Assembly: GCA_038087875.1 (NCBI GenBank)
Contig: CM075985.1
Location: 25,296,001-25,360,000, forward strand
DNA: 64,000 nucleotides
Direction: 5' to 3'
DNA from: Malacoraja senta
Lineage: Eukaryota
The stretch's first letter is position 1; every line of letters begins with the position of its first letter. Position numbers and translations under genes: made by a program. The notes under the pieces are model-generated. The model was not told where the DNA came from, made no database searches, and saw only the letters and a list, made by a program, of their open reading frames with translations. Positions 140 to 63,853 of this stretch are shown piece by piece.

Positions 140-181
140 CTGATGTAATGCTGGTGATGGTCTCTGTTGTTGGTGTCGTTT
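140..181 (-). CDS. Micro-exon type A, 42 nt, consensus ETTPTTETTTSITS (this copy ETTPTTETITSITS)
   Basis: Minus strand ttttttttcactag|AAACGACA...ACATCAG|gttagt. 18 copies starting (+ coordinate) at 140, 3866, 7601, 11327, 17491, 21215, 24925, 29519, 33247, 36960, 40655, 42969, 46682, 50377, 52691, 56404, 60117, 63812. Confidence 0.88.
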
Positions 182-3100
182 CTAGTGAAAAAAAAGAATG
201 CTGTATTCAAGTGGGGCAGCCAAGAGGAATTGGTACGCAGTTATAAAGCCATCAACAGGAATTCATGAGCTGGCATATTTTATGAAAACGTTTTACTAGT
301 TGTCACTTTCTTCATCAGTCAATAAAGCATGCGGCCATAAAATATGGCGGAATTGATTTTTCCTCGTCTTTGAGAAATTGCAGGTGATCAGGCATTTAGT
401 AAGATTGAGTTGGCACAGATGTGCAGCTGGTAGAGCTGCAGCCTCATAGTGTTAGAGATTTGTATTCTATCCTGACCTCGGTTGCTGTCTATGCTGGGAT
501 TGCACGTTGTCCTTTTCACTGCCTGTGATGCCCCAAGTTTTTAACAGAGGAATATACTGACCTGATGTTGTGGTGGTCCCAGATGTTGATGTAGTTGTTT
601 CTAGTGAAATAAAAAAAATGTTATGTTCCACTGAGACAAACAAGAGGAATTGTTATGCAGTTTAGAATCCTTCAACAGGAATTTATCAACTGGCACCTTT
701 TAATAAAACATTTTACACTCGATATTTCCTTATCAGTGAATAAAGCGTGCGGCCATACAATGCGGCTGCATTACTTTTTCCTTGTCAATCAGCAGCTGAA
801 TATTTCAGGGCCATCACAAACAATTTCAATTTCTTAATGTACCAACTTCAGATTTTGTGGAAGCTCAGCAAGTATTCCAAGAACTACTGATCAGAAATTT
901 AGAACATAAGGAGCGGTAAAGTGCCACAGCTGGTGCAACTCCTACCTCACAGCACCAGAGACTTCAGATTGATTTGTTCCATGGGTGTTGTGTGCATGGA
1001 GATTACATATACTCCCTGTTATGTGTGCCTTTCCTACAAGTGTCAGAAATATATTGTCACTAACCTGATGTAGTACTGGTAGTGGTCTCAGTTGATGATG
1101 TAGTTGTTGGTGTTTCTAGTGAAAGAAAATAATGCAATATTCAACCAAGACAGCCAAGAGGAATTGGTATACAGCTAACTATTGGTAGTCAGGAAACCAT
1201 CAGCAGGAATTCATATGCTGGCACACTTTATTAAAATGTTTAACAGATGGCATTTTTGTTCTTCATAAAATAAAATTGTAGGGCAAAACATACTTTTGAT
1301 CAATCAGCAGCTGTCTATTTCTGTGCCATCACAAATAATCCTAAGCTATCTATACACCAGTTCCGGATTTCCTGGAAGATCAACCGTCTTCCAAAGACCG
1401 CAAGGTCTACTTAATACCATAATTTCTAATAGTATGGAATGTGTGTACTATGGGTAAGCATGTCTGTTCATATGTCCCATTGATACACGATTCTCAACTT
1501 GCATAAAATGTGTTCATATTAATCATGGTTTTGTTTTTTGCTATGGAATGTCCGAAGAAATAGAGAAGCAGAAAACACCAACACATATCCTCCACAAATC
1601 TGAACTATTTTGAAATTGTGTCATAATTTGGTACAATTGTTATGAGCCAAACATTGACATCTTAACGTGTATATTTTCACAATTTATGCCAATAATGTGA
1701 GCAAAGATGCAAGAAGTAAGTCACAGAGCTGATGTTAGAAATGTTGTTTCATTGTCTTTGATTTGCCAATGTTTATGGAAAGTGGTTTGACTCACCTGTT
1801 GTGGAACTGGAGGTGGACTCAGTTGTACCAGTTGTCAAATATGTTGTTGGTGTTGTTCCTTGAGAGCAAATAGAAAAGCATTTACAAATTGAATTGCAAG
1901 AGTCACCAATCAATTTCAGTACGATACTGCACATTTTCCTGAGACTGGGCTGAATTTTAACAATGTTCATTGTTCGTGCCTAAGCAAAGGACATTTAGAA
2001 GTTAACCAAATTTTGCTTCGTCATTTATCAAGGACCGAAATTATGAAAAGACATTGTGATTTTTCAAAGAAAGTTCTGAACTCCTTTATTGATCCATTTT
2101 GGAAAAATCATTGAGCAGAAATAAAACTGTTTAACAGCGTTGCCATGACCAAAAACTCCCGGAATAGTGGAAGAGGCGAAGGGAAGAGACCTTTTCTATA
2201 AAAGTGAAAATCCTTATCCATGTCAACTGAAAAGTGCCAGCCTCAATGCTCTTTTTAAAATTATTTAGGCAACCAGCACCAAAAGGCCACCTTAATATGG
2301 TAGAGGCTTCTATATTTTCGTGGTGAGAAACTACATTTTTTGAATAAAGGAATGAACAAATATTCCTGAAGAGGGTGCTGTGTAGAACTTCACGAAACAA
2401 AGCACAGTCCTAAAGGAAAAGCTAACAAGATTGATAGATGATGTTACTAACCTGATGTAGTGCTGGTGGTGGTCTCAGTTGTTGGTGTCGTTTCTAGTGA
2501 AAGAAAGAATGCTGTATTCAAGTGGAGCAGCCAAGAGGAATTGGTACACGGTTATAAAGCCATCAACAGCAATTCATGAGCTGGCACATTTTATGAAAGT
2601 GTTTTAATATGTAGATTGGTTACTTCTTAAGAATATATGCAAAGATAAACTGCTCAGCAACAACAGACTGTGTCCCCCGCGGCCTCTCCACGGCGTTCAG
2701 CGCCCAGCTCGCCTATTTCACCACCTCAACTCGGTGGGTCTCCGGTGATGGCCCCGGTCACTTCCCCGGTCACTTCCTCGTCATTTCACCAGTGAATTGA
2801 ATAAAGCATGCGGCCATACTATACGGCTGCATTACTTTTTCCTTGTCAATCAGCAGCTGAATATTTCAGGGCCATCATAAACAATTTCAATTTCTTAATG
2901 TACCAACTTCAGATTTTGTGGAAGCTCAGCAAGTATTCTAAGAACTACTGATCAGAAATTTAGAACATAAGGAGCGGTAAAGTGCCACAGCTAGTGCAAC
3001 TCCAACCTCACAGCACCAGAGAATTCAGATTGATTTGTTCCACAGGTGTTGTGTGCATGGAGATTACATGTATTCCTGTTGTGTGTGCCTTTCCTACAAG

Positions 3101-9100: not shown

Positions 9101-12100
9101 TTATGAGCCAAACATTGACATCTTAACGTGTATATTTGCACAATTTATGCCAATAACGTAAGCAAAGATGCAAGAAGTAAGTCACAGAGCTGATGTTAGA
9201 AATGTTGTTTCATTGTCTTTGATTTGCCAATGTTTATGGAAAGTGGTTTGACTCACCTGTTGTGGAACTGGAGGTGGACTCAGTTGTACCAGTTGTCAAA
9301 GATGTTGTTGGTGTTGTTCCTTGAGAGCAAATAGAAAAGCATTTACAAATTGAATTGCAAGAGTCACCAATCAATTTCAGTACGATACTGCACATTTTCC
9401 TGAGACTGGGCTGAATTTTAACAATGTTCATTGTTCGTGCCTAAGCAAAGGACATTTAGAAGTTCACCAAATTTTGCTTCGTCATTTATCAAGGACCGAA
9501 ATTATGAAAAGACATTGTGATTTTTCAAAGAAAGTTCAGAACTCCTTTATTGATCCATTTTGGAAAAATCATTGAGCAGAAACAAAACTGTTTAACAGCG
9601 TTGCCATGACCAAAAACTCCCGGAATAGTGGAAGAGGCAAAGGGAAGAGACCTTTTCTATAAAAGTGAAAATCCTTATCCATGTCAACTGAAAAGTGCCA
9701 GCCTCAATGCTCTTTTTAAAATTATTTAGGCAACCTGCACCAAAACGCCACTTTAATATGGTAGAGGCTTCTATATTTTCGTGGTGAGAAACTACATTTT
9801 TTGAATAAAGGAATGAACAAATATTCCTGAAGAGGGTGCTGTGTAGAACTTCACTAAACAAAGCACAGTCCTAAAGGAAAAGCTAACAAGATTGATAGAT
9901 GATGTTACTAACCTGATGTAGTGCTGGTGGTGGTCTCAGTTGTTGGTGTCGTTTCTAGTGAAAGAAAGAATGCTGTATTCAAGTGGAGCAGCCAAGAGGA
10001 ATTGGTACACAGTTATAAAGCCATGAACAGCAATTCATGAGCTGGCACATTTTATGAAAGTGTTTTAATATGTAGATTGGTTATTTCTTAATAATATATG
10101 CAAAGATAAACTGCTCAGCAACAACAGACTGTGTCCCCCGCGGCCTCTCCACGGCGTTCAGCGCCCAGCTCGCCTATTTCACCACCTCAACTCGGTGGGT
10201 CTCCGGTGATGGCCCCGGTCACTTCCCCGGTCACTTCCCCATCATTTCACCAGTGAATTGAATAAAGCATGCGGCCATACTATACGGCTGCATTACTTTT
10301 TCCTTGTCAATCAGCAGCTGAATATTTCAGGGCCATCATAAACAATTTCAATTTCTTAATGTACCAACTTCAGATTTTGTGGAAGCTCAGAAAGTATTCT
10401 AAGAACTACTGATCAGAAATTTAGAACATAAGGAGCGGTAAAGTGCCACAGCTGGTGCAACTCCTACCTCACAGCACCAGAGAATTCAGATTGATTTGTT
10501 CCACAGGTGTTGTGTGCATGGAGATTACATGTACTCCTGTTGTGTGTGCCTTTCCTACAAGTGTCTGAAATATATTGTCACTAACCTGATGTAGTACTGG
10601 TTGTGGTCTCAGTTGTTGATGTAGTTGTTGGTGTTTCTACTGAAAGAAAATAATGCAATATTGAACCAAGGCAGCCAAGAGGAATTGGTATACACCTAAC
10701 TATTGGTAGTCAGGAAACCATCAGCAGGAATTCATATGCTGGCACACTTTATTAAAATGTTTAACAGATGGCATTTTTGTTCTTCGTAGAATAAAATGGC
10801 AGGCCAAATTATATCTGATCAATCAGCAGCTGAATATTTCTGTGCCATCACAAATAAACCTGTTCTCTCTATATACCAGTTGCAGATTTCCTGGAAGATC
10901 AACCGTCTTCCAAATACCGCAAGGTCTACTTAATACCATATTTTCTAATACCATTATTCGTTGATTCATTTTTGAAAAATCTTTGAGCTGAAACAAAACT
11001 GTTTAACAGCGTTGCCATGACCAAAAACTCCCGGAATAGTGGAAGAGGCGAAGGGAAGAGACCTTTTCTATAAAAGTGAAAATCCTTATCCATATCTACT
11101 GTAAGGTGCCAGACTCAATTCACTTTTTAAATTATTATTGCAGGCAATCAGCACCAAAAGGCCTCCTTAATTCGGTAGTTGTTTCTATATTTTCTTGGTG
11201 AGAAACCACATTTTTGGAATAAAGCAATGAACAAATATTCCTGAAGAGGGTGCTATATAGAGCTTCACTAAACAAAGCACAGTCCTAAAGGAAAAGCTAA
11301 CAAGATTGATAGATGATGTTACTAACCTGATGTAATGCTGGTGGTGGTCTCTGTTGTTGGTGTCGTTTCTAGTGAAAAAAAAGAATGCTGTATTCAAGTG
11401 GGGCAGCCAAGAGGAATTGGTACGCAGTTATAAAGCCATCAACAGGAAATTCATGAGCTGGCATATTTTATGAAAACGTTTTACTAGTTGTCACTTTCTT
11501 CATCAGTCAATAAAGCATGCGGCCATACTATATGGCTGCATTGATTTTTCCTCGTCTTTCAGAAATTGCAGGCGATCAGGCATTTAGTAAGATTGAGTTG
11601 GCACAGATGTGCAGCTGGTAGAGCTGCAGCCTCATAGTGTTAGAGATTTGTATTCTATCCTGACCTCGGTTGCTGTCTATGCTGGGATTGCACGTTCTCC
11701 TTTTCACTGCCTGTGATCCCCCAAGTTTTTAACAGAGGATGATACTGACCTGATGTTGTGGTGGTCCCAGATGTTGATGTAGTTGTTTCTAGTGAAATAC
11801 AAACAAATGTTATGTTCCACTGAGACAAACAAGAGGAATTGTTATGCAGTTTAGAATCCTTCAACAGGAATTTATCAACTGGCACCTTTTAATAAAACAT
11901 TTTACACTTGATATTTCCTTATCAGTGAATAAAGCGTGCGGCCATACAATGCGGCTGCATTACTTTTTCCTTGTCAATCAGCAGCTGAATATGTCAGGGC
12001 CATCACAAACAATTTCAATTTCTTAATGTACCAACTTCAGATTTTGTGGAAGCTCAGCAAGTATTCCAAGAACTACTGATCAGGAATTTATAACATAAGG

Positions 12101-15100
12101 AGCGGTAAAGTGCCACAGCTGGTGCAACTCCTACCTCACAGCACCAGAGACTTCAGATTGATTTGTTCCATGGGTGTTGTGTGCATGGAGATTACATGTA
12201 CTCCCTGTTATGTGTGCCGTTCCTACAAGTGTCAGAAATATATTGTCACTAACCTGATGCAGTACTGGTAGTGGTCTCAGTTGATGATGTAGTTGTTGGT
12301 GTTTCTAGTGAAAGAAAATAATGCAATATTCAACCAAGACAGCCAAGAGGAATTGGTATACAGCTAACTATTGGTAGTCAGGAAACCATCAGCAGGAATT
12401 CATATGCTGGCACACTTTATTAAAATGTTTAACAGATGGTATTTTTGTTCTGCATAGAATAAAATTGTAGGGCAAAACATACTTTTGATCAATCAGCAGC
12501 TGAATATTTCTGTGCGATCACAAATAATCTTGTGCTATCTATACACCAGTTGCGGATTTCCTGGAAGATCAACCGTCTTCCAAAGACCGCAAGGTCTACT
12601 TAATACCTTAATTTCTAATAGTATGGAATGTGTGTACTATGGGTAAGCATGTCTGTTCATATGTCCCATTGATACATGATTCTCAACTTGCATAAAATGT
12701 GTTCATATTAATCATGGTTTTGTTTTTTGCTACGGAATGTCCGAAGAAATAGAGAAGCAGAAAACACCAACACATATCCTCCACAAATCTGAACTATTTT
12801 GAAATTGTGTCATAATTTGGTACAATTGTTATGAGCCAAACATTGACATCTTAACGTGTATATTTGCACAATTTATGCCAATAATGTAAGCAAAGATGCA
12901 AGAAGTAAGTCACAGAGCTGATGTTAGAAATGTTGTTTCATTGTCTTTGATTTGCCAATGTTTATGGAAAGTGGTTTGACTCACCTGTTGTGGAACTGGA
13001 GGTGGACTCAGTTGTACCAGTTGTCAAAGATGTTGTTGGTGTTGATCCTTGAGAGCAAATAGAAAAGCATTTACAAATTGAATTGCAAGAGTCACCAATC
13101 AATTTCAGTACGATACTGCACATTTTCCTGAGACTGGGCTGAATTTTAACAATGTTCATTGTTCGTGCCTAAGCAAAGGACATTTAGAAGTTAACCAAAT
13201 TTTGCTTCGTCATTTATCAAGGACCGAAATTATGAAAAGACATTGTGATTTTTCAAAGAAAGTTCTGAACTCCTTTATTGATCCATTTTTGAAAAATCTT
13301 TGAGCTGAAACAAAACTGTTTAACAGCGTTGCCATGACCAAAAACTCCCGGAATAGTGGAAGAGGCGAAGGGAAGAGACCTTTTCTATAAAAGTGAAAAT
13401 CCTTATCCATGTCAACTGAAAAGTGCCAGCCTCTATGCTCTTTTTAAAATTATTTAGGCAACCAGCACCAAAAGGCCACCTTAATATGGTAGAGGCTTCT
13501 ATATTTTCGTGGTGAGAAACTACATTTTTTGAATAAAGGAATGAACAAATATTCCTGAAGAGGGTGCTGTGTAGAACTTCACTAAACAAAGCACAGTCCT
13601 AAAGGAAAAGCTAACAAGATTGATAGATGATGTTACTAACCTGATGTGGTGCTGGTGGTGGTCTCAGTTGTTGGTGTCGTTTCTAGTGAAAGAAAGAATG
13701 CTGTATTCAAGTGGAGCAGCCAAGAGGAATTGGTACACAGTTATAAAGCCATCAACAGCAATTCATGAGCTGGCACATTTTATGAAAGTGTTTTAATATG
13801 TAGACTGGTTACTTCTTAATAATATATGCAAAGATAAACTGCTCAGCAACAACAGACTGTGTCCCCCGCGGCCTCTCCACGGCGTTCAGCGCCCAGCTCG
13901 CCTATTTCACCACCTCAACTCGGTGGGTCTCCGGTGATGGCCCCGGTCACTTCCCCGTCATTTCACCAGTGAATTGAATAAAGCATGCGGCCATACTATA
14001 CGGCTGCATTACTTTTTCCTCGTCTTTCAGAAATTGCAGGCGATCAGGCATTTAGTAAGATTGAGTTGGCACAGATGTGCAGCTGGTAGAGCTGCAGCCT
14101 CATAGTGTTAGAGATTTGTATTCTATCCTGACCTCGGTTGCTGTCTATGCTGGGATTGCACGTTCTCCTTTTCACTGCCTGTGATCCCCCAAGTTTTTAA
14201 CAGAGGATGATACTGACCTGATGTTGTGGTGGTCCCAGATGTTGATGTAGTTGTTTCTAGTGAAATAAAAAAATGTTATGTTCCACTGAGACAAACAAGA
14301 GGAATTGTTATGCAGTTTAGAATCCTTCAACAGGAATTTATCAACTGGCACCTTTTAATAAAACATTTTACACTTGATATTTCATTATCAGTGAATAAAG
14401 CGTGCGGCCATACAATGCGGCTGCATTACTTTTTCCTTGTCAATCAGCAGCTGAATATGTCAGGGCCATCACAAACAATTTCAATTTCTTAATGTACCAA
14501 CTTCAGATTTTGTGGAAGCTCAGCAAGTATTCCAAGAACTACTGATCAGAAATTTAGAACATAAGGAGTGGTAAAGTGCCACAGCTGGTGCAACTCCTAC
14601 CTCACAGCACCAGACACTTCAGATTGATTTGTTCCATGGGTGTTGTGTGCATGGAGATTACATGTACTCCCTGTTATGTGTGCCTTTCCTACAAGTGTCA
14701 GAAATATATTGTCACTAACCTGATGTAGTACTGGTAGTGGTCTCAGTTGATGATGTAGTTGTTGGTGTTTCTAGTGAAAGAAAATAATGCAATATTTAAC
14801 CAAGACAGCCAAGAGGAATTGGTATACAGCTAACTATTGGTAGTCAGGAAACCATCAGTAGGAATTCAGGTGCTGGCACACTTTATTAAAATGTTTAACA
14901 GATGGCATTTTTCTTCTTCATAGAATAAAATTGTAGGGCAAAACATACTTTTGATCAATCAGCAGCTGAATATTTCTGTGCCATCACAAATAATCCTGTG
15001 CTATCTATACACCAGTTGCGGATTTCCTGGAAGATCAACCGTCTTCCAAAGACCGCAAGGTCTACTTAATACCATAATTTCTAATAGTATGCAATGTGTG

Positions 15101-51100: not shown

Positions 51101-54100
51101 TCAGCAAGTATTACAAGAACTACTGATCAGAAATTTAGAACATAAGGAGCGGTAAAGTGCCACAGCTGGTGCAACTCCTACCTCACAGCACCAGAGACTT
51201 CAGATTGATTTGTTCCATGGGTGTTGTGTGCATGGAGATTACATGTACTCCCTGTTATGTGTGCCTTTCCTACAAGTGTCAGAAATATATTGTCACTAAC
51301 CTGATGTAGTACTGGTAGTGGTCTCAGTTGATGATGTAGTTGTTGGTGTTTCTAGTGAAAGAAAATAATGCAATATTCAACCAAGACAGCCAAGAGGAAT
51401 TGGTATACAGCTAACTATTGGTAGTCAGGAAACCATCAGCAGGAATTCATATGCTGGCACACTTTATTAAAATGTTTAACAGATGGTATTTTTGTTCTTC
51501 ATAGAATAAAATTGTAGGGCAAAACATACTTTTGATCAATCAGCAGCTGAATATTTCTGTGCGATCACAAATAATCTTGTGCTATCTATACACCAGTTGC
51601 GGATTTCCTGGAAGATCAACCGTCTTCCAAAGACCGCAAGGTCTACTTAATACCTTAATTTCTAATAGTATGGAATGTGTGTACTATGGGTAAGCATGTC
51701 TGTTCATATGTCCCATTGATACATGATTCTCAACTTGCATAAAATGTGTTCATATTAATCATGGTTTTGTTTTTTGCTACGGAATGTCTGAAGAAATAGA
51801 GAAGCAGAAAACACCAACACATATCCTCCACAAATCTGAACTATTTTGAAATTGTGTCATAATTTGGTACAATTGTTATGAGCCAAACATTGTCATCTTA
51901 ACGTGTATATTTGCACAATTTATGCCAATAATGTAAGCAAAGATGCAAGAAGTAAGTCACAGAGCTGATGTTAGAAATGTTGTTTCATTGTCTTTGATTT
52001 GCCAATGTTTATGGAAAGTGGTTTGACTCACCTGTTGTGGAACTGGAGGTGGACTCAGTTGTACCAGTTGTCAAAGATGTTGTTGGTGTTGATCCTTGAG
52101 AGCAAATAGAAAAGCATTTACAAATTGAATTGCAAGAGTCACCAATCAATTTCAGTACGATACTGCACATTTTCCTGAGACTGGGCTGAATTTTAACAAT
52201 GTTCATTGTTCGTGCCTAAGCAAAGGACATTTAGAAGTTAACCAAATTTTGCTTCGTCATTTATCAAGGACCGAAATTATGAAAAGACATTGTGATTTTT
52301 CAAAGAAAGTTCTGAACTCCTTTATTGATCCATTTTTGAAAAATCTTTGAGCTGAAACAAAACTGTTTAACAGCGTTGCCATGACCAAAAACTCCCGGAA
52401 TAGTGGAAGAGGCGAAGGGAAGAGACCTTTTCTATAAAAGTGAAAATCCTTATCCATGTCTACTGAAAGGTGCCAGACTCAATTCACTTTTTAAATTATT
52501 ATTGCAGGCAATCAGCACCAAAAGGCCTCCTTAATTCGGTAGTTGTTTCTATATTTTCTTGGTGAGAAACTACATTTTTGGAATAAAGCAATGAACAAAT
52601 ATTCCTGAAGAGGGTGCTGTGTAGAACTTCACTAAACAAAGCACAGTCCTAAAGGAAAAGCTAACAAGATTGATAGATGATGTTACTAACCTGATGTAGT
52701 GCTGGTGGTGGTCTCAGTTGTTGGTGTCGTTTCTAGTGAAAAAAAAGAATGCTGTATTCAAGTGGGGCAGCCAAGAGGAATTGGTACGCAGTTATAAAGC
52801 CATCAACAGGAATTCATGAGCTGGCAAATTTTATGAAAACGTTTTACTAGTTGTCACTTTCTTCATCAGTCAATAAAGCATGCGGCCATACTATATGGCT
52901 GCATTGATTTTTCCTCGTCTTTCAGAAATTGCAGCTGATCAGGCATTTAGTAAGATTTAGTTGGCACAGATGTGCAGCTGGTAGAGCTGCAGCCTCATAG
53001 TGTTAGAGATTTGTATTCTATCCTGACCTCGGTTGCTGTCTATGCTGGGATTGCACGTTCTCCTTTTCACTGCCTGTGATCCCCCAAGTTTTTAACAGAG
53101 GATGATACTGACCTGATGTTGTGGTGGTCCCAGATGTTGATGTAGTTGTTTCTAGTGAAATAAAAAAATGTTATGTTCCACTGAGACAAACAAGAGGAAT
53201 TGTTATGCAGTTTAGAATCCTTCAACAGGAATTTATCAACTGGCACCTTTTAATAAAACATTTTACACATGATATTTCCTTATCAGTGAATAAAGCATGC
53301 GGCCATACAATGCGGCTGCATTACTTTTTCCTTGTCAATCAGCAGCTGAATATGTCAGGGCCATCACAAACAATTTCAATTTCTTAATGTACCAACTTCA
53401 GATTTTGTGGAAGCTCAGCAAGTATTCCAAGAACTACTGAACAGAAATTTAGAACATAAGGAGCGGTAAAGTGCCACAGCTGGTGCAACTCCTACCTCAC
53501 AGCACCAGAGACTTCAGATTGATTTGTTCCATGGGTGTTGTGTGCATGGAGATTACATGTACTCCCTGTTATGTGTGCCTTTCCTACAAGTGTCAGAAAT
53601 ATATTGTCACTAACCTGATGTAGTACTGGTAGTGGTCTCAGTTGTTGATGTAGTTGTTGGTGTTTCTAGTGAAAGAAAATAATGCAATATTCAACCAAGA
53701 CAGCCAAGAGGAATTGGTATAGAGCTAATTATTGGTAGTCAGGAAACCATCAGCAGGAATTCATATGCTGGCACACATTATTAAAATGTTTAACAGATGG
53801 CATTTTTGTTCTTCATAGAATAAAATTGTAGGGCAAAACATACTTTTGATCAATCAGCAGCTGAATATTTCTGTGCCATCACAAATAATCCTGAGCTATC
53901 TATATACCAGTTGCGGATTTCCTGGAAGATCAACCGTCTTCCAAAGACCGCAAGGTCTACTTAATACCATAATTTCTAATAGTATGGAATGTGTGTACTA
54001 TGGGTAAGCATGTCTGTTCATATGTCCCATTGATACATGATTCTCAACTTGCATAAAATGTGTTCATATTAATCATGGTTTTGTTTTTTGCTACGGAATG

Positions 54101-57100
54101 TCCGAAGAAATAGAGAAGCAGAAAACACCAACACATATCCTCCACAAATCTGAACTGTTTTGAAATTGTGTCATAATTTGGTACAATTGTTATGAGCCAA
54201 ACATTGACATCTTAACGTGTATATTTGCACAATTTATGCCAATAATGTGAGCAAAGATGCAAGAAGTAAGTCACAGAGCTGATGTTAGAAATGTTGTTTC
54301 ATTGTCTTTGATTTGCCAATGTTTATGGAAAGTGGTTTCACTCACCTGTTGTGGAACTGGAGGTAGACTCAGTTGTACCAGTTGTCAAAGATGTTGTTGG
54401 TGTTGTTCCTAAAGAGCAAATAGAAAAGCATTTACAAATTGAATTGCAAGAGTCACCAATCAATTTCAGTACGATACTGCACATTTTCCTGAGACTGGGC
54501 TGAATTTTAACAATGTTCATTGTTCGTGCCTAAGCAAAGGACATTTAGAAGTTAACCATATTTTGCTTCGTCATTGATCAAGGACCGAAATTATGAAAAG
54601 ACATTGTGATTCTTCAAAGAAAGTTCTGAACTCCTTTATTGATCTATTTTGGAAAAATCATTGAGCAGAAACAAAACTGTTTAACAGCGTTGCCATGACC
54701 AAAAACTCCCGGAATAGTGGAAGAGGCGAAGGGAAGAGACCTTTTCTATAAAAGTGAAAATCCTTATCCATGTCAACTGAAAAGTGCCAGCCTCTATGCT
54801 CTTTTTAAAATTATTTAGGCAACCAGCACCAAAAGGCCACCTTAATATGGTAGAGGCTTCTATATTTCCGTGGTGAGAAACTACATTTTTTGAATAAAGG
54901 AATGAACAAATATTCCTGAAGAGGGTGCTGTGTAGAACTTCACTAAACAAAGCACAGTCCTAAAGGAAAAGCTAACAAGATTGATAGATAATGTTACTAA
55001 CCTGATGTGGTGCTGGTGGTGGTCTCAGTTGTTGGTGTCGTTTCTAGTGAAAGAAAGAATGCTGTATTCAAGTGGAGCAGCCAAGAGGAATTGGTACACA
55101 GTTATAAAGCCATCAACAGCAATTCATGAGCTGGCACATTTTATGAAAGTGTTTTAATATGTAGACTGGTTACTTCTTAATAATATATGCAAAGATAAAC
55201 TGCTCAGCAACAACAGACTGTGTCCCCCGCGGCCTCTCCACGGCGTTCAGCGCCCAGCTCGCCTATTTCACCACCTCAACTCGGTGGGTCTCCGGTGATG
55301 GCCCCGGTCACTTCCCCGTCATTTCACCAGTGAATTGAATAAAGCATGCGGCCATACTATACGGCTGCATTACTTTTTCCTTGTCAATCAGCAGCTGAAT
55401 ATTTCAGGGCCATCATAAACAATTTCAATTTTTTAATGTACCAACTTCAGATTTTGTGGAAGCTCAGCAAGTATTCTAAGAACTACTGATCAGAAATTTA
55501 GAACATAAGGAGCGGTAAAGTGCCACAGCTGGTGCAACTCCTACCTCGCAGCACCAGAGAATTCAGATTGATTTGTTCCACAGGTGTTGTGTGCATGGAG
55601 GTTACATGTACTCCTGTTGTGTGTGCCTTTCCTACAAGTGTCTGAAATATATTGTCACTAACCTGATGTAGTACTGGTTGTGGTCTCAGTTGTTGATGTA
55701 GTTGTTGGTGTTTCTACTGAAAGAAAATAATGCAATATTCAACCAAGGCAGCCAAGAGAAATTGGTATACACCTAACTATTGGTAGTCAGGAAACCATCA
55801 GCAGGAATTCATATGCTGGCACACTTTATTAAAATGTTTAACAGATGGCATTTTTGTTCTTCGTAGAATAAAATGGCAGGCCAAATTATATCTGATCAAT
55901 CAGCAGCTGAATATTTCTGTGCCATCACAAATAAACCTGTTCTCTCTATATACCAGTTGCAGATTTCCTGGAAGATCAACCGTCTTCCAAATACTGCAAG
56001 GTCTACTTAATACCATATTTTCTAATACCATTATTCGTTGATCCATTTTTGAAAAATCTTTGAGCTGAAACAAAACTGTTTAACAGCGTTGCCATGACCA
56101 AAAACTCCCGGAATAGTGGAAGAGGCGAAGGGAAGAGACCTTTTCTATAAAAGTGAAAATCCTTATCCATGTCTACTGAAAGGTGCCAGACTCAATTCAC
56201 TTTTTAAATTATTATTGCAGGCAATCAGCACCAAAAGGCCTCCTTAATTCGGTAGTTGTTTCTATATTTTCTTGGTGAGAAACTACATTTTTGGAATAAA
56301 GCAATGAACAAATATTCCTGAAGAGGGTGCTGTGTAGAACTTCACTAAACAAAGCACAGTCCTAAAGGAAAAGCTAACAAGATTGATAGATGATGTTACT
56401 AACCTGATGTAGTGCTGGTGGTGGTCTCAGTTGTTGGTGTCGTTTCTAGTGAAAAAAAAGAATGCTGTATTCAAGTGGGGCAGCCAAGAGGAATTGGTAC
56501 GCAGTTATAAAGCCATCAACAGGAATTCATGAGCTGGCATATTTTATGAAAACGTTTTACTAGTTGTCACTTTCTTCATCAGTCAATAAAGCATGCGGCC
56601 ATACTATATGGCTGCATTGATTTTTCCTCGTCTTTCAGAAATTGCAGCTGATCAGGCCTTTAGTAAGATTTAGTTGGCACAGATGTGCAGCTGGTAGAGC
56701 TGCAGCCTCATAGTGTTAGAGATTTGTATTCTATCCTGACCTCGGTTGCTGTCTATGCTGGGATTGCACGTTCTCCTTTTCACTGCCTGTGATCCCCCAA
56801 GTTTTTAACAGAGGATGATACTGACCTGATGTTGTGGTGGTCCCAGATGTTGATGTAGTTGTTTCTAGTGAAATAAAAAAATGTTATGTTCCACTGAGAC
56901 AAACAAGAGGAATTGTTATGCAGTTTAGAATCCTTCAACAGGAATTTATCAACTGGCACCTTTTAATAAAACATTTTACACATGATATTTCCTTATCAGT
57001 GAATAAAGCATGCGGCCATACAATGCGGCTGCATTACTTTTTCCTTGTCAATCAGCAGCTGAATATGTCAGGGCCATCACAAACAATTTCAATTTCTTAA

Positions 57101-60100
57101 TGTACCAACTTCAGATTTTGTGGAAGCTCAGCAAGTATTCCAAGAACTACTGAACAGAAATTTAGAACATAAGGAGCGGTAAAGTGCCACAGCTGGTGCA
57201 ACTCCTACCTCACAGCACCAGAGACTTCAGATTGATTTGTTCCATGGGTGTTGTGTGCATGGAGATTACATGTACTCCCTGTTATGTGTGCCTTTCCTAC
57301 AAGTGTCAGAAATATATTGTCACTAACCTGATGTAGTACTGGTAGTGGTCTCAGTTGTTGATGTAGTTGTTGGTGTTTCTAGTGAAAGAAAATAATGCAA
57401 TATTCAACCAAGACAGCCAAGAGGAATTGGTATACAGCTAATTATTGGTAGTCAGGAAACCATCAGCAGGAATTCATATGCTGGCACACATTATTAAAAT
57501 GTTTAACAGATGGCATTTTTGTTCTTCATAGAATAAAATTGTAGGGCAAAACATACTTTTGATCAATCAGCAGCTGAATATTTCTGTGCCATCACAAATA
57601 ATCCTGAGCTATCTATATACCAGTTGCGGATTTCCTGGAAGATCAACCGTCTTCCAAAGACCGCAAGGTCTACTTAATACCATAATTTCTAATAGTATGG
57701 AATGTGTGTACTATGGGTAAGCATGTCTGTTCATATGTCCCATTGATACATGATTCTCAACTTGCATAAAATGTGTTCATATTAATCATGGTTTTGTTTT
57801 TTGCTACGGAATGTCCGAAGAAATAGAGAAGCAGAAAACACCAACACATATCCTCCACAAATCTGAACTATTTTGAAATTGTGTCATGATTTGGTACAAT
57901 TGTTATGAGCCAAACATTGACATCTTAACGTGTATATTTGCACAATTTATGCCAATAATGTGAGCAAAGATGCAAGAAGTAAGTCACAGAGCTGATGTTA
58001 GAAATGTTGTTTCATTGTCTTTGATTTGCCAATGTTTATGGAAAGTGGTTTCACTCACCTGTTGTGGAACTGGAGGTGGACTCAGTTGTACCAGTTGTCA
58101 AAGATGTTGTTGGTGTTGTTCCTAAAGAGCAAATAGAAAAGCATTTACAAATTGAATTGCAAGAGTCACCAATCAATTTCAGTACGATACTGCACATTTT
58201 CCTGAGACTGGGCTGAATTTTAACAATGTTCATTGTTCGTGCCTAAGCAAAGGACATTTAGAAGTTAACCATATTTTGCTTCGTCATTGATCAAGGACCG
58301 AAATTATGAAAAGACATTGTGATTCTTCAAAGAAAGTTCTGAACTCCTTTATTGATCTATTTTGGAAAAATCATTGAGCAGAAACAAAACTGTTTAACAG
58401 CGTTGCCATGACCAAAAACTCCCGGAATAGTGGAAGAGGCGAAGGGAAGAGACCTTTTCTATAAAAGTGAAAATCCTTATCCATGTCAACTGAAAAGTGC
58501 CAGCCTCTATGCTCTTTTTAAAATTATTTAGGCAACCAGCACCAAAAGGCCACCTTAATATGGTAGAGGCTTCTATATTTTCGTGGTGAGAAACTACATT
58601 TTTTGAATAAAGGAATGAACAAATATTCCTGAAGAGGGTGCTGTGTAGAACTTCACTAAACAAAGCACAGTCCTAAAGGAAAAGCTAACAAGATTGATAG
58701 ATAATGTTACTAACCTGATGTGGTGCTGGTGGTGGTCTCAGTTGTTGGTGTCGTTTCTAGTGAAAGAAAGAATGCTGTATTCAAGTGGAGCAGCCAAGAG
58801 GAATTGGTACACAGTTATAAAGCCATCAACAGCAATTCATGAGCTGGCACATTTTATGAAAGTGTTTTAATATGTAGACTGGTTACTTCTTAATAATATA
58901 TGCAAAGATAAACTGCTCAGCAACAACAGACTGTGTCCCCCGCGGCCTCTCCACGGCGTTCAGCGCCCAGCTCGCCTATTTCACCACCTCAACTCGGTGG
59001 GTCTCCGGTGATGGCCCCGGTCACTTCCCCGTCATTTCACCAGTGAATTGAATAAAGCATGCGGCCATACTATACGGCTGCATTACTTTTTCCTTGTCAA
59101 TCAGCAGCTGAATATTTCAGGGCCATCATAAACAATTTCAATTTTTTAATGTACCAACTTCAGATTTTGTGGAAGCTCAGCAAGTATTCTAAGAACTACT
59201 GATCAGAAATTTAGAACATAAGGAGCGGTAAAGTGCCACAGCTGGTGCAACTCCTACCTCGCACCACCAGAGAATTCAGATTGATTTGTTCCACAGGTGT
59301 TGTGTGCATGGAGGTTACATGTACTCCTGTTGTGTGTGCCTTTCCTACAAGTGTCTGAAATATATTGTCACTAACCTGATGTAGTACTGGTTGTGGTCTC
59401 AGTTGTTGATGTAGTTGTTGGTGTTTCTACTGAAAGAAAATAATGCAATATTCAACCAAGGCAGCCAAGAGAAATTGGTATACACCTAACTATTGGTAGT
59501 CAGGAAACCATCAGCAGGAATTCATATGCTGGCACACTTTATTAAAATGTTTAACAGATGGCATTTTTGTTCTTCGTAGAATAAAATGGCAGGCCAAATT
59601 ATATCTGATCAATCAGCAGCTGAATATTTCTGTGCCATCACAAATAAACCTGTTCTCTCTATATACCAGTTGCAGATTTCCTGGAAGATCAACCGTCTTC
59701 CAAATACTGCAAGGTCTACTTAATACCATATTTTCTAATACCATTATTCGTTGATCCATTTTTGAAAAATCTTTGAGCTGAAACAAAACTGTTTAACAGC
59801 GTTGCCATGACCAAAAACTCCCGGAATAGTGGAAGAGGCGAAGGGAAGAGACCTTTTCTATAAAAGTGAAAATCCTGATCCATGTCTACTGAAAGGTGCC
59901 AGACTCAATTCACTTTTTAAATTATTATTGCAGGCAATCAGCACCAAAAGGCCTCCTTAATTCGGTAGTTGTTTCTATATTTTCTTGGTGAGAAACTACA
60001 TTTTTGGAATAAAGCAATGAACAAATATTCCTGAAGAGGGTGCTATATAGAGCTTCACTAAACAAAGCACAGTCCTAAAGGAAAAGCTAACAAGATTGAT

Positions 60101-63100
60101 AGATGATGTTACTAACCTGATGTAGTGCTGGTGGTGGTCTCTGTTGTTGGTGTTGTTTCTAGTGAAAGAAAAGATTGCTGTATTGAAGTGGGGCAGCCAA
60201 TAGGAATTGGTACACAGTTATAAAGCCATCAACAGGAATTCATGAGCTGGCATATTTTATGAAAACGTTTTACTAGTTGTCACTTTCTTCATCAGTCAAT
60301 AAAGCATGCGGCCATACTATATGGCTGCATTGATTTTTCCTCGTCTTTCAGAAATTGCAGGCGATCAGGCATTTAGTAAGATTGAGTTGGCACAGATGTG
60401 CAGCTGGTAGAGCTGCAGCCTCATAGTGTTAGAGATTTGTATTCTATCCTGACCTCGGTTGCTGTCTATGCTGGGATTGCACGTTCTCCTTTTCACTGCC
60501 TGTGATCCCCCAAGTTTTTAACAGAGGATGATACTGACCTGATGTTGTGGTGGTCCCAGATGTTGATGTAGTTGTTTCTAGTGAAATAAAAAAATGTTAT
60601 GTTCCACTGAGACAAACAAGAGGAATTGTTATGCAGTTTAGAATCCTTCAACAGGAATTTATCAACTGGCACCTTTTAATAAAACATTTTACACTTGATA
60701 TTTCCTTATCAGTGAATAAAGCGTGCGGCCATACAATGCTGCTGCATTACTTTTTCCTTGTCAATCAGCAGCTGAATATGTCAGGGCCATCACAAACAAT
60801 TTCAATTTCTTAATGTACCAACTTCAGATTTTGTGGAAGCTCAGCAAGTATTCCAAGAACTACTGATCAGAAATTTAGAACATAAGGAGTGGTAAAGTGC
60901 CACAGCTGGTGCAACTCCTACCTCACAGCACCAGAGACTTCAGATTGATTTGTTCCATGGGTGTTGTGTGCATGGAGATTACATGTACTCCCTGTTATGT
61001 GTGCCTTTCCTACAAGTGTCAGAAATATATTGTCACTAACCTGATGTAGTACTGGTAGTGGTCTCAGTTGATGATGTAGTTGTTGGTGTTTCTAGTGAAA
61101 GAAAATAATGCAATATTTAACCAAGACAGCCAAGAGGAATTGGTATACAGCTAACTATTGGTAGTCAGGAAACCATCAGTAGGAATTCAGGTGCTGGCAC
61201 ACTTTATTAAAATGTTTAACAGATGGCATTTTTCTTCTTCATAGAATAAAATTGTAGGGCAAAACATACATTTGATCAATCAGCAGCTGAATATTTCTGT
61301 GCCATCACAAATAATCCTGTGCTATCTATACACCAGTTGCGGATTTCCTGGAAGATCAACCGTCTTCCAAAGACCGCAAGGTCTACTTAATACCATAATT
61401 TCTAATAGTATGCAATGTGTGTACTATGGGTAAGCACGTCTGTTCATATGTCCCATCGATACATGATTCTCAACTTGCATAAAATGTGTTCAAATTAATC
61501 ATGGTTTTGTTTTATGCTACGGAATGTCCGAAGAAATAGAGAAGCAGAAAACACCAACACATATCCTCCACAAATCTGAACTATTTTGAAATTGTGTCAT
61601 AATTTGGTACAATTGTTATGAGCCAAACATTGACATCTTAACGTGTATATTTGCACAATTTATGCCAATAATGTAAGCAAAGATGCAAGAAGTAAGTCAC
61701 AGAGCTGATGTTAGAAATGTTGTTTCATTGTCTTTGATTTGCCAATGTTTATGGAAAGTGGTTTGACTCACCTGTTGTGGAACTGGAGGTGGACTCAGTT
61801 GTACCAGTTGTCAAAGATGTTGTTGGTGTTGTTCCTTGAGAGCAAATAGAAAAGCATTTACAAATTGAATTGCAAGAGTCACCAATCAATTTCAGTACGA
61901 TACTGCACATTTTCCTGAGACTGGGCTGAATTTTAACAATGTTCATTGTTTGTGCCTAAGCAAAGGACATTTAGAAGTTAACCAAATTTTGCTTCGTCAT
62001 TTATCAAGGACCGAAATTATGAAAAGACATTGTGATTTTTCAAAGAAAGTTCTGAACTCCTTTATTGATCCATTTTGGAAAAATCATTGAGCACAAACAA
62101 AACTGTTTAACAGCGTTGCCATGACCAAAAACTCCCGAAATAGTGGAAGAGGCGAAGGGAAGAGACCTTTTCTATAAAAGTGCCAGCCTCTATGCTATTT
62201 TTAAAATTATTTAGGCAACCAGCACCAAAAGGCCACCTTAATATGGTAGAGGCTTCTATATTTTCGTGGTGAGAAACTACATTTTTTGAATAAAGGAATG
62301 AACAAATATTCCTGAAGAGGGTGCTGTGTAGACCTTCACTAAACAAAGCACAGTCCTAAAGGAAAAGCTAACAAGATTGATAGATGATGTTACTAACCTG
62401 ATGTAGTGCTGGTGGTGGTCTCAGTTGTTGGTGTCGTTTCTAGTGAAAGAAAGAATGCTGTATTCAAGTGGAGCAGCCAAGAGGAATTGGTACACGGTTA
62501 TAAAGCCATCAACAGCAATTCATGAGCTGGCACATTTAATGAAAGTGTTTTAATATGTAGATTGGTTACTTCTTAATAATATATGCAAAGATAAACTGCT
62601 CAGCAACAACAGACTGTGTCCCCCGCGGCCTCTCCACGGCGTTCAGCGCCCAGCTCGCCTATTTCACCACCTCAACTCGGTGGGTCTCCGGTGATGGCCC
62701 CGGTCACTTCCCCGGTCACTTCCCTGTCATTTCACCAGTGAATTGAATAAAGCATGCGGCCATACTATACGGCTGCATTACTTTTTCCTTGTCAATCAGC
62801 AGCTGAATATTTCAGGGCCATCATAAACAATTTCAATTTCTTAATGTACCAACTTCAGATTTTGTGGAAGCTCAGCAAGTATTCTAAGAACTACTGATCA
62901 GAAATTTAGAACATAAGGAGCGGTAAAGTGCCACAGCTGGTGCAACTCCTACCTCACAGCACCAGAGAATTCAGATTGATTTGTTCCACAGGTGTTGTGT
63001 GCATGGAGATTACATGTACTCCTGTTGTGTGTGCCTTTCCTACAAGTGTCTGAAATATATTGTCACTAACCTGATGTAGTACTGGTTGTGGTCTCAGTTG

Positions 63101-63853
63101 TTGATGTAGTTGTTGGTGTTTCTACTGAAAGAAAATAATGCAATATTCAACCAAGGCAGCCAAGAGGAATTGGTATACACCTAACAATTGGTAGTCAGGA
63201 AAACATCAGCAGGAATTCATATGCTGGCACACTTTATTAAAATGTTTAACAGATGGCATTTTTGTTCTTCGTAGAATAAAATGGCAGGCCAAATTATATC
63301 TGATCAATCAGCAGCTGAATATTTCTGTGCCATCACAAATAAACCTGTTCTCTCTATATACCAGTTGCAGATTTCCTGGAAGATCAACCGTCTTCCAAAT
63401 ACCGCAAGGTCTACTTAATACCATATTTTCTAATACCATTATTCGTTGATCCATTTTTGAAAAATCTTTGAGCTGAAACAAAACTGTTTAACAGCGTTGC
63501 CATGACCAAAAACTCCCGGAATAGTGGAAGAGGCGAAGGGAAGAGACCTTTTCTATAAAAGTGAAAATCCTTATCCATATCTACTGTAAGGTGCCAGACT
63601 CAATTCACTTTTTAAATTATTATTGCAGGCAATCAGCACCAAAAGGCCTCCTTAATTCGGTAGTTGTTTCTATATTTTCTTGGTGAGAAACTACATTTTT
63701 GGAATAAAGCAATGAACAAATATTCCTGAAGAGGGTGCTATATAGAGCTTCACTAAACAAAGCACAGTCCTAAAGGAAAAGCTAACAAGATTGATAGATG
63801 ATGTTACTAACCTGATGTAATGCTGGTGGTGGTCTCTGTTGTTGGTGTCGTTT
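140..63853 (-). CDS. Internal part of a multi-exon mucin-like (Thr/Ser-rich PTS domain) gene; 104 phase-1 micro-exons, ~5,010 nt, ~1,670 aa in this window; both ends outside the window
   Basis: Every exon has canonical AG/GT ends on the minus strand, a length divisible by 3, and ends in G so that junction codons are GAA or GGA (GAC once). I saw no stop codon or indel in any exon copy, while introns carry many indels. Composition of the 96-aa unit: T57 S19 E10 P5 G3 L1 I1. Confidence 0.9.
410..520 (+). mobile_element. Degenerate tRNA-derived SINE 5' relic (HE1-like), repeated in every A-B intron
   Basis: tggcacagatgtgcagctggtagagctgcagcctcatagtgttagaga...tatcctgacctcggttgctgtctatg...ttgcacgttctcc resembles the A-box/B-box head of shark/ray SINEs; recognised from memory, not aligned. 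Confidence 0.65.
562..600 (-). CDS. Micro-exon type B, 39 nt, ETTTSTSGTTTTS
   Basis: Minus strand tttttttatttcactag|AAACAACT...ACATCAG|gtcagt. 18 copies at 562, 4288, 8024, 11750, 14218, 17913, 21637, 25347, 29942, 33669, 37382, 41077, 43391, 47104, 50799, 53113, 56826, 60539. Confidence 0.88.
911..1035 (+). mobile_element. Second degenerate tRNA-derived SINE relic (HE1-like), in every B-C intron, with a paralogous copy in every E-F intron (e.g. 2972-3095)
   Basis: gagcggtaaagtgccacagctggtgcaactcctacctcacagcaccagagacttcagattgat...gggtgttgtgtgcatggagattacatgtactccctgt resembles the same SINE head; heavily CpG-decayed. Confidence 0.6.
1065..1115 (-). CDS. Micro-exon type C, 51 nt, ETPTTTSSTETTTSTTS
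   Basis: Minus strand ttttctttcactag|AAACACCA...ACATCAG|gttagt. 18 copies at 1065, 4790, 8526, 12254, 14720, 18414, 22124, 25850, 30444, 34171, 37884, 41579, 43893, 47606, 51301, 53615, 57328, 61041. Confidence 0.88.
1796..1858 (-). CDS. Micro-exon type D, 63 nt, consensus GTTPTTSLTTGTTESTSSSTT (this copy has Y for the first S)
   Basis: Minus strand ttttctatttgctctcaag|GAACAACA...ACAACAG|gtgagt; the peptide is visible inside the 65-aa ORFs. Copies at 1796, 5521, 9257, 12985, 15451, 19145, 22855, 26581, 31175, 34902, 38615, 42310, 44624, 48337, 52032, 54346, 58059, 61772, plus a divergent copy at 28858. Confidence 0.9.
2452..2493 (-). CDS. Micro-exon type E (paralog of A), 42 nt, ETTPTTETTTSTTS
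   Basis: Minus strand ttctttctttcactag|AAACGACA...ACATCAG|gttagt. 16 copies at 2452, 6177, 9913, 13641, 16077, 19801, 23511, 27237, 31831, 35558, 39241, 45280, 48963, 55002, 58715, 62398. Confidence 0.88.
2610..2795. other. Insert with a GC/CpG-rich core in the E-F intron, containing a 12-bp mini-repeat (CCCCGGTCACTT x1-2)
   Basis: Replaces about 25 bp of the paralogous A-B intron. Two 12-mer copies in most units; one copy at ~13940, 35860, 45580, 55300, 59015. Confidence 0.75.
3125..3175 (-). CDS. Micro-exon type F (paralog of C), 51 nt (54 nt if the upstream CAG is used), ETPTTTSTTETTTSTTS
   Basis: Minus strand ttttctttcagtag|AAACACCA...ACATCAG|gttagt. 15 copies at 3125, 6857, 10586, 16750, 20474, 24184, 27910, 32503, 36219, 39914, 45941, 49636, 55663, 59376, 63071. 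Confidence 0.86.
28213..28454 (-). mobile_element. 5'-truncated CR1-clade LINE (elasmobranch HER1-like) 3' end, intronic, single copy
   Basis: Absent from all other units at the site gcag-atttc-ctggaag. Flanked by ATTTC direct repeats (28208-28212 and 28455-28459). Minus strand encodes FTQGVVKLWNSLPQKLDEASSLAIFKRELDVALVAKGIRGYGEKAGTGY*, resembling the CR1 ORF2 C-terminus, and ends in a TTTCTATG-type 8-mer tail. Confidence 0.9.
28858..28920 (-). CDS. Divergent micro-exon D', 63 nt, GTTPTTYLINGTTESTTSSTT
   Basis: Minus strand tttctatttgctcttcag|GAACAACA...ACAACAG|gtgagt; same length and phase as D; single copy in the window. Confidence 0.85.
32900..58040. repeat. Higher-order repeat, period 9,722 bp (3713+3695+2314), about 2.6 copies
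   Basis: Exact 9,722-bp offsets: ORFs 33677/43399/53121, 37390/47112/56834 and 41085/50807, with shared diagnostic variants. Confidence 0.95.

What the first reader, a model, noticed from the sequence alone, without database searches (positions are those of the whole stretch)
140..63853. All exons are interchangeable cassettes: capacity for combinatorial splicing and length polydispersity
Every exon is phase 1-1 and a multiple of 3, so any subset can be skipped without frameshift, and the junction codon is still E, G or D. Donors are mostly non-optimal (GTTAGT, GTCAGT) and most D acceptors are the weaker AAG. Inference: one gene could make a ladder of glycoprotein lengths, as described for Xenopus FIM mucins and Schistosoma micro-exon genes.
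Basis: inference. Interest (0 to 1): 0.7.

Follow-up and report, generated by a model that had tools for sequence, protein, structure and literature searches.

The report
Mucin core written as 104 micro-exons
The window is the sugar-carrying middle of a fish mucus-protein gene, split into 104 tiny exons that all keep the reading frame; any of them could be skipped harmlessly, but nothing available shows that the animal does this, and the idea is already published for other mucins.

Summary
The minus strand carries 104 Thr/Ser-rich micro-exons of 39, 42, 51 or 63 nt. Every one ends in G and starts with AA, GA or AC, so all are phase 1-1 and the junction codon is Glu, Gly or Asp. Donors are GTTAGT (67), GTCAGT (18) and GTGAGT (19). 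D-exon acceptors are AAG in 14 of 19 copies.

The interpretation, combinatorial splicing that gives a ladder of lengths, could not be tested. No RNA run holds this stretch. The two runs that do hold it behave as unspliced DNA. Protein searches recovered no transcript or gene model.

Sequence alone favours ordinary adjacent splicing:
- Equal phase is a precondition for copying exon-plus-intron blocks, not a sign of regulation.
- Donors match the consensus at 8 or 9 of 9 positions.
- The array already varies in length at the DNA level, through four short or rearranged units and a 9.7-kb block repeated at 99.8% identity.

All 15 B exons have a tandem CAGTAG acceptor, which could give a 54-nt form with a Val junction codon.

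Length control by splicing of multi-exon mucin domains was proposed in 2006 for chicken Muc13. This scan reached the same verdict on neighbouring arrays of this genome. The case is a new member of a known kind and of modest interest.

The parts
140..63853 (-). Array of 104 phase 1-1 micro-exons with their introns (380-897 nt). In the direction of transcription the exon order is ABCDEF x14, three short four-exon units, one ADBCDEF unit and a final A.
   Evidence: full coordinate table
60117..60158 (-). Representative A exon: 42 nt, acceptor CACTAG, donor CAG|GTTAGT
59376..59426 (-). Representative B exon: 51 nt. It has a tandem CAGTAG acceptor, and use of the upstream CAG would give 54 nt (start 59429).
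58715..58756 (-). Representative C exon: 42 nt, a paralogue of A (93% identical over about 500 nt, introns included)
58059..58121 (-). Representative D exon: 63 nt, donor GTGAGT. This copy has a TAG acceptor. 14 of the 19 D copies have AAG.
57328..57378 (-). Representative E exon: 51 nt, a paralogue of B (95% identical over about 690 nt), with a single CACTAG acceptor
56826..56864 (-). Representative F exon: 39 nt, donor GTCAGT
50799..52732 (-). Short four-exon unit A-D-E-F. Its A-D intron is A-like for the first 280 nt and C-like beyond that. A second copy lies at 41077-43010.
11750..13682 (-). Short unit whose first exon is C-type on both sides (F-C-D-E-F). The preceding F-C intron is 535 nt.
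27910..29560 (-). Irregular unit A-D'-B. The divergent D' exon lies at 28858-28920 and has a CAG acceptor. The D'-B intron is 897 nt.
32881..58469 (.). About 2.6 copies of a 9,722-bp higher-order block (two six-exon units plus one short unit), 99.8% identical with no indels

Best explanation
The window is part of the O-glycosylated (PTS) core of a secreted mucin gene on the minus strand. The core grew by tandem duplication of exon-plus-intron blocks, not by expansion inside one large exon. One ancestral micro-exon with about 150 nt of upstream intron gave rise to six exon types. These now repeat as a 3.7-kb six-exon unit encoding 96 residues, and recently as a 9.7-kb higher-order block. Only phase-symmetric exons can be multiplied this way without breaking the frame. 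The uniform 1-1 phase is therefore a record of how the array was built. I infer that each donor is normally spliced to the next acceptor downstream, giving one long Thr/Ser/Glu-rich polypeptide. Length variation would then arise mainly at the DNA level through unequal recombination between near-identical units. Occasional in-frame skipping would be tolerated as noise, because no premature stop results. With a hundred or more near-identical introns, even a skip rate of 1% per exon would alter most transcripts, but by only about 1% of their length. Shown here: the exon structure, phases, splice motifs, composition, paralogy and DNA-level heterogeneity. Inferred: expression, adjacent splicing and the source of length variation.
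For: Searches show 104 exons, all of the same phase, with intact AG and GT sites and no in-frame stop. One search gives a composition of Thr 59%, Ser 19.5%, Glu 10% and Pro 5%. It also gives donor scores of 87.5 (GTTAGT, GTCAGT) and 98.9 (GTGAGT) on a Shapiro-Senapathy-type scale, using a matrix I recalled from memory. One search shows that all six exon types align, together with about 150 nt of upstream intron. One search shows that exon types differ by in-frame indels of 3n. Minimum substitutions are 11 at third, 9 at first and 4 at second codon positions, and most of the first-position changes swap ACN and TCN (Thr and Ser). Searches show that A-D, F-C and D-B adjacencies already exist in the DNA. 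Searches show units 97.7-100% identical and a 9,722-bp block at 99.8%, which points to recent DNA-level expansion. One search finds no inverted repeats within a unit that could loop out exons. Earlier scan notes, not tested here, place a MUC19-type D3 assembly about 39 kb upstream and a VWC plus cystine-knot end about 43 kb downstream.
Against: No RNA evidence of any kind was obtained. Expression and splice-site use are therefore inferred. 85 of 104 donors have a pyrimidine at +3, and 14 of 19 D exons use an AAG acceptor. Both are uncommon in vertebrates and could lower inclusion. Exons of 39-63 nt are short for exon definition. About 150 nt of upstream intron is kept at roughly 78-80% identity between old paralogues while the downstream intron is not. 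That pattern could reflect splicing control rather than just the limits of the ancestral duplicated piece. Among the young copies, exons are not measurably more conserved than introns (diversity 0.0137 against 0.0166; 6 synonymous against 18 non-synonymous variable sites). Frog FIM-C.1 is reported as highly polymorphic through alternative splicing (PMC7177656).
Confidence: 0.6

Rival explanations
1. Frequent or regulated cassette skipping. The weak features (+3 pyrimidine donors, AAG acceptors on D exons, very short exons) make inclusion probabilistic or tissue-dependent. One gene then yields a ladder of mucin lengths and repeat compositions.
For: All exons are symmetric and any junction gives Glu, Gly or Asp. 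AAG acceptors occur on 14 of 19 D exons and +3 pyrimidines on 85 of 104 donors. The upstream intron of about 150 nt is conserved between old paralogues. There are published precedents or proposals: chicken Muc13 (PMC1552070) and FIM-C.1 (PMC7177656).
Against: No transcript data were available. Donors match consensus at 8 or 9 of 9 positions and are the same in every copy, so there is no graded set of strengths on which choice could act. No intron pairing elements were found. Symmetric phase is required by the duplication history in any case.
Confidence: 0.2
2. Subtle heterogeneity only. Splicing is adjacent, but the tandem CAGTAG acceptor of the B exons is used at both AGs, so transcripts differ by a 3-nt Val codon at up to 15 places in this window.
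For: All 15 B exons have CAGTAG, while 17 of the 18 paralogous E exons have CACTAG and one has CGCTAG. From general knowledge of NAGNAG acceptors, an upstream CAG is usually used at least as well as a downstream TAG.
Against: No RNA was available to show which AG is used. This reading is compatible with the best explanation and does not exclude it.
Confidence: 0.12
3. The array, or part of it, is not expressed as assembled. It could be a decaying or silent paralogue, or the copy number and order could be assembly artefacts of a near-identical tandem repeat.
For: Blocks are 99.8-100% identical. Exons show no excess conservation over introns among copies. No transcript or gene model was recovered.
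Against: No stop, frameshift or lost splice site occurs in 104 exons. Old paralogous exon types keep frame and Thr/Ser coding while their downstream introns have diverged beyond alignment. Independent DNA runs hold the unit sequence.
Confidence: 0.08

Closest known systems
Chicken and zebrafish Muc13 mucin domain encoded by multiple exons (Lang, Hansson, Samuelsson 2006, PMC1552070)
   Same: Each exon encodes one repeat of the PTS domain and the exons are nearly identical. The authors explicitly propose that PTS length could be set by splicing of mucin-domain exons within one individual.
   Different: Muc13 is a membrane mucin with at least 12 repeats of 20 residues. Here there are six exon types of 13-21 residues and 104 exons in this window alone, arranged in 3.7-kb and 9.7-kb higher-order DNA repeats. 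By earlier scan notes, not tested here, the gene is a secreted MUC19-type mucin.
[quoted passage not shown]
   Same: They are skin mucins with Thr-rich repeats. [quoted passage not shown]
   Different: The FIM data are cDNA and Northern observations. Their repeat exon structure was not available to me. No transcript data exist here, so only the potential is shared.
Mammalian gel-forming mucins (MUC2, MUC5AC, MUC5B, MUC6)
   Same: They have a Thr/Ser/Pro-rich tandem-repeat core, and its length varies through DNA-level repeat number.
   Different: In these mucins the PTS domain is one large exon (PMC9712336, PMC13345508). Here it is split into micro-exons with introns of 380-897 nt.
Schistosoma micro-exon genes (MEGs)
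   Same: They have short symmetric exons (3-81 bp), and skipping them keeps the frame (bioRxiv 10.1101/2023.06.21.545858).
   Different: MEGs are small secreted proteins of flatworms with non-repetitive micro-exons and documented variant transcripts. They are unrelated in sequence, size and origin. This array is a tandem duplication of one exon family.
Titin PEVK and nebulin repeat exons (from general knowledge)
   Same: They are long runs of duplicated symmetric exons in a giant structural protein, where in-frame skipping tunes length.
   Different: Those cases have extensive transcript evidence and tissue-specific regulation. None is available here.

Membership tests
Mucin PTS (mucin) domain | A long region dominated by Thr, Ser and Pro, usually as tandem repeats | tested here: met
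   Thr 59%, Ser 19.5% and Pro 5% over 1,670 codons counted exon by exon. The coding unit repeats every 96 residues.
Gel-forming mucin of MUC19 type | Three N-terminal VWD-C8-TIL assemblies, a C-terminal VWC plus cystine knot, and no D4 assembly (PMC4948705) | not testable with these tools
   These domains lie outside the window. Only unchecked earlier scan notes place them about 39 kb upstream and 43 kb downstream.
Multi-exon PTS domain (chicken Muc13 type) | [quoted passage not shown] | tested here: met
   Six exon types, each a Thr-rich repeat bounded by AG and GT, in 104 copies.
Multi-exon PTS domain (chicken Muc13 type) | Transcript support for the exon boundaries | tested here: inconclusive
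   No RNA run holds the stretch. The contigs laid on it are unspliced. No transcript-derived protein was found.
Alternatively spliced cassette array (FIM-type polydispersity, titin PEVK type) | Several transcript lengths or non-adjacent exon junctions within one individual | not testable with these tools
   No RNA data were available.
Alternatively spliced cassette array | Exons symmetric in phase, so skipping stays in frame | tested here: met
   104 of 104 exons are phase 1-1 and multiples of 3.
Schistosoma micro-exon genes | A small secreted protein assembled from many different symmetric micro-exons, restricted to flatworms | tested here: not met
   The exon sizes fit, at 39-63 nt. However, the exons are near-identical tandem duplicates within a giant repeat array in a vertebrate-type locus. 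This is a resemblance in principle only.
NAGNAG tandem acceptor | Two AG dinucleotides 3 nt apart at the intron end | tested here: met
   CAGTAG in 15 of 15 B exons. Use of both sites was not tested.

The most novel reading that the evidence does not exclude
The animal uses this array as a tunable cassette library. Tissue- or condition-dependent inclusion of micro-exons, for example the AAG-acceptor D exons, would set the length and Glu/Thr pattern of a secreted gel mucin, and so the properties of its mucus, from a single gene.
Probability: 0.1. Interest if true: 0.6.

Novelty: new member of a known kind. Interest (0 to 1): 0.27.

Why it matters
Most textbook mucins carry their glycosylated core in one huge exon, and its length changes only between alleles. 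A core written as hundreds of frame-neutral micro-exons could in principle change length within one animal. It would therefore be a good system for asking whether mucin length is regulated. The idea has been in print for other mucins since 2006. What this window adds is a very large and very regular example, plus a list of pitfalls for testing it. It provides no evidence that the mechanism operates.

Tried and rejected
1. RNA evidence. The look-up of sequencing runs with kind 'rna' on window 56500-62480 listed only two runs of unrecorded kind. Read laying showed contigs that cover introns and no joints at exon borders, so the runs behave as DNA. Both tools are now at their caps.

2. Word-index protein search with the 68-residue stop-free stretch around a D exon found no candidate.

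3. The full-library HMMER search with the same stretch gave two hits, P0001 and P0002. Both are unrelated repetitive proteins. Thr-rich low-complexity sequence is penalised by the filters, so this blank says little.

4. A Pfam scan of four exon-containing stretches found nothing meaningful.

5. An Rfam scan of one unit found nothing.

6. A search for inverted repeats within a unit found none.

7. I looked for selection among the copies. The units are too young (97.7-100% identical) to separate exons from introns.

8. I did not build or search a joined spliced protein model. Exons were handled one by one and by reference.

9. The human MUC19 cloning paper (PMC3175562) is not held.

Full report
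WHAT IS THERE

The window has no N and no short-period tandem repeat. It is built from long-period repeats with dominant spacings of about 3,713, 3,695, 2,314 and 9,722 bp.

Translating the minus strand shows Thr/Ser/Pro-rich stretches about every 400-750 bp. Each stretch is bounded by a pyrimidine tract plus AG upstream and by GT downstream.

A pattern search, relaxed for two variant copies, gives 104 exon candidates.

There are six exon types:

| Type | Length (nt) | Copies |
|---|---|---|
| A | 42 | 19 |
| B | 51 | 15 |
| C | 42 | 15 |
| D | 63 | 19 |
| E | 51 | 18 |
| F | 39 | 18 |

CHECK OF THE OBSERVATION

- Every exon length is a multiple of 3.
- Every exon ends in G.
- Exons start with AA (84), GA (19) or AC (1). 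All exons are therefore phase 1-1, and joining any two gives GAA, GGA or GAC.
- Donors are GTTAGT (67), GTCAGT (18) and GTGAGT (19).
- Positions -3 to -1 read CAG in 103 exons and CGG in one (window 27237-27278).
- D acceptors are AAG (14), TAG (4) and CAG (1).

Two qualifications follow.

First, all 15 B exons have a tandem acceptor CAGTAG, while 17 of the 18 paralogous E exons have CACTAG and one has CGCTAG. If the upstream CAG is used, the B exon is 54 nt and its junction codon is GTA (Val) followed by Glu. From general knowledge of NAGNAG sites this is at least as likely as use of the TAG. Phase is unchanged, but the list 'E, G or D' would be incomplete.

Second, the donors deviate from consensus only at +3. 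On a Shapiro-Senapathy-type scale they score 87.5 (GTTAGT, GTCAGT) and 98.9 (GTGAGT). I recalled that matrix from memory, so the numbers are approximate. The donors are unusual but not weak.

IS IT MORE THAN CHANCE?

The 104 cases are not independent. Aligning one copy of each type shows that all six share the exon and about 150 nt of upstream intron, while the downstream intron diverges within about 10-20 nt.

- A and C are 93% identical over about 500 nt.
- B and E are 95% identical over about 690 nt.
- A-type and B-type are 78-80% identical over about 200-230 nt.

The independent evidence is therefore as follows:
- four length classes, each a multiple of 3;
- splice sites retained in all six types;
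- differences between types that are in-frame indels, third-position changes, or first-position ACN/TCN (Thr/Ser) swaps.

That pattern fits a coding Thr-rich frame. Counted exon by exon, the 1,670 codons are Thr 59%, Ser 19.5%, Glu 10%, Pro 5% and Gly 3.4%. This is a typical acidic mucin (PTS) domain.

Copies of the 3.7-kb unit are 97.7-100% identical. At that age exons and introns cannot be told apart by conservation. Diversity is 0.0137 in exons against 0.0166 in introns. Of 24 variable exon sites, 6 are synonymous. Exon columns contain no gaps, against 233 gap columns in introns. These figures are too weak to count as a test.

ARRAY ARCHITECTURE

In the direction of transcription the exon order is ABCDEF x3, ADEF, ABCDEF x2, ADEF, ABCDEF x3, ADBCDEF, ABCDEF x3, a short unit, ABCDEF x3, and a final A.

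- **Short units at 50799-52732 and 41077-43010.** The first exon is A-like upstream and for 280 nt downstream, then C-like.
- **Short unit at 11750-13682.** It starts with a C-type exon after a 535-nt F-C intron.
- **Unit at 27910-29560.** It holds a divergent D' exon with a CAG acceptor, followed directly by B.

Whether the short units are deletions by unequal recombination or older forms cannot be decided from this pattern alone. Either way, A-D, F-C and D-B adjacencies exist in the DNA.

Window 32881-58469 is about 2.6 copies of a 9,722-bp block at 99.8% identity with no indels. DNA-level expansion is therefore recent. The exact copy number also rests on the assembly of a near-perfect repeat.

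TEST OF THE INTERPRETATION

The claim needs RNA.

- The look-up of sequencing runs on window 56500-62480 returned no RNA holder. It listed two runs of unrecorded kind from one study, each holding half of the sampled words.
- Laid on the stretch, their contigs cover introns and exons alike. None of the reported joints falls on an exon border. The runs behave as DNA and say nothing about splicing.
- I looked for transcript-derived or annotated proteins using the 68-residue stop-free stretch around a D exon. The word search found no candidate.
- The full-library search returned two unrelated repetitive proteins.
- Pfam, Rfam and an inverted-repeat search added nothing.
- Exons were treated singly and by reference.

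WHAT THE SEQUENCE ALONE SUGGESTS

Symmetric phase is a precondition for multiplying exon-plus-intron blocks inside a coding region. It records how the array grew and is not evidence for regulated skipping.

Splice signals are the same in every copy of a type and are near consensus. There is no graded series of strengths on which a choice could act.

Some features could lower inclusion:
- the +3 pyrimidine in 85 donors;
- AAG acceptors on 14 D exons;
- exon lengths of 39-63 nt;
- possibly the conserved upstream intron segment, although this may simply mark the limits of the ancestral duplicated piece.

My inference is that splicing is mainly adjacent. Length variation would come chiefly from DNA-level changes in unit number. 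A background of in-frame skipping would be tolerated because it creates no premature stop. With a hundred or more such introns, even 1% skipping per exon would touch most transcripts while changing length by only about 1%. That would not produce a visible ladder.

COMPARISON WITH WHAT IS KNOWN

- Lang and colleagues (PMC1552070) described the chicken Muc13 PTS domain as encoded by multiple near-identical exons, one repeat each. They noted the same for zebrafish Muc13. They stated that PTS length might be varied within one individual by regulating the splicing of mucin-domain exons.
- Mammalian gel-forming mucins carry the domain in one large exon (PMC9712336; PMC13345508).
- Schistosome micro-exon genes share only the principle of short symmetric exons.

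Earlier notes of this scan, which I did not test, call the genome a skate's. They place a MUC19-type D3 assembly about 39 kb beyond the window's end and a VWC plus cystine-knot end about 43 kb before its start. That would make this window the middle of a PTS array of roughly 146 kb. Follow-ups on neighbouring arrays reached the same verdict: the design is real and already known, and mix-and-match splicing is not shown.

VERDICT

The proposed junction test needs the caveats listed under next steps. This is a new and very large member of a known kind, and its interest is modest.

Noticed in passing
window 59427-59432 and the equivalent site of all 15 B exons: A tandem CAGTAG (NAGNAG) acceptor is fixed in every B exon. 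17 of the 18 paralogous E exons have CACTAG and one has CGCTAG. It could add or drop one Val codon per B exon.
   Followed up: partly
window 32881-58469: A 9,722-bp higher-order block (two six-exon units plus one four-exon unit) is repeated about 2.6 times at 99.8% identity with no indels. It is either a very recent duplication or an assembly risk.
   Followed up: partly
window 2640-2800 and the same place in other B-C introns, for example near 59014: A G+C-rich insert sits in the B-C intron and contains a 12-bp motif (CCCCGGTCACTT). The DNA runs show an extra copy of the motif in part of the depth, so it behaves as a small minisatellite inside the intron.
   Followed up: no
window 28858-28920: A divergent D' exon (Tyr, Ile and Asn in place of Ser, Thr and Thr) is the only D copy with a CAG acceptor. 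It sits in the irregular A-D'-B unit, and an 897-nt intron follows it.
   Followed up: partly
window 400-540 and 900-1020, repeated in every unit: Two intron segments on the plus strand look like tRNA-derived SINE fragments of the kind I recall from cartilaginous fish. Rfam gave no hit at gathering score on one unit.
   Followed up: partly
window 27237-27278 and 17491-17532: Two single variant exons. One C exon has a synonymous A-to-G change that turns the donor context from CAG|GT to CGG|GT. One A exon starts with AC, which gives the only Asp junction codon.
   Followed up: yes
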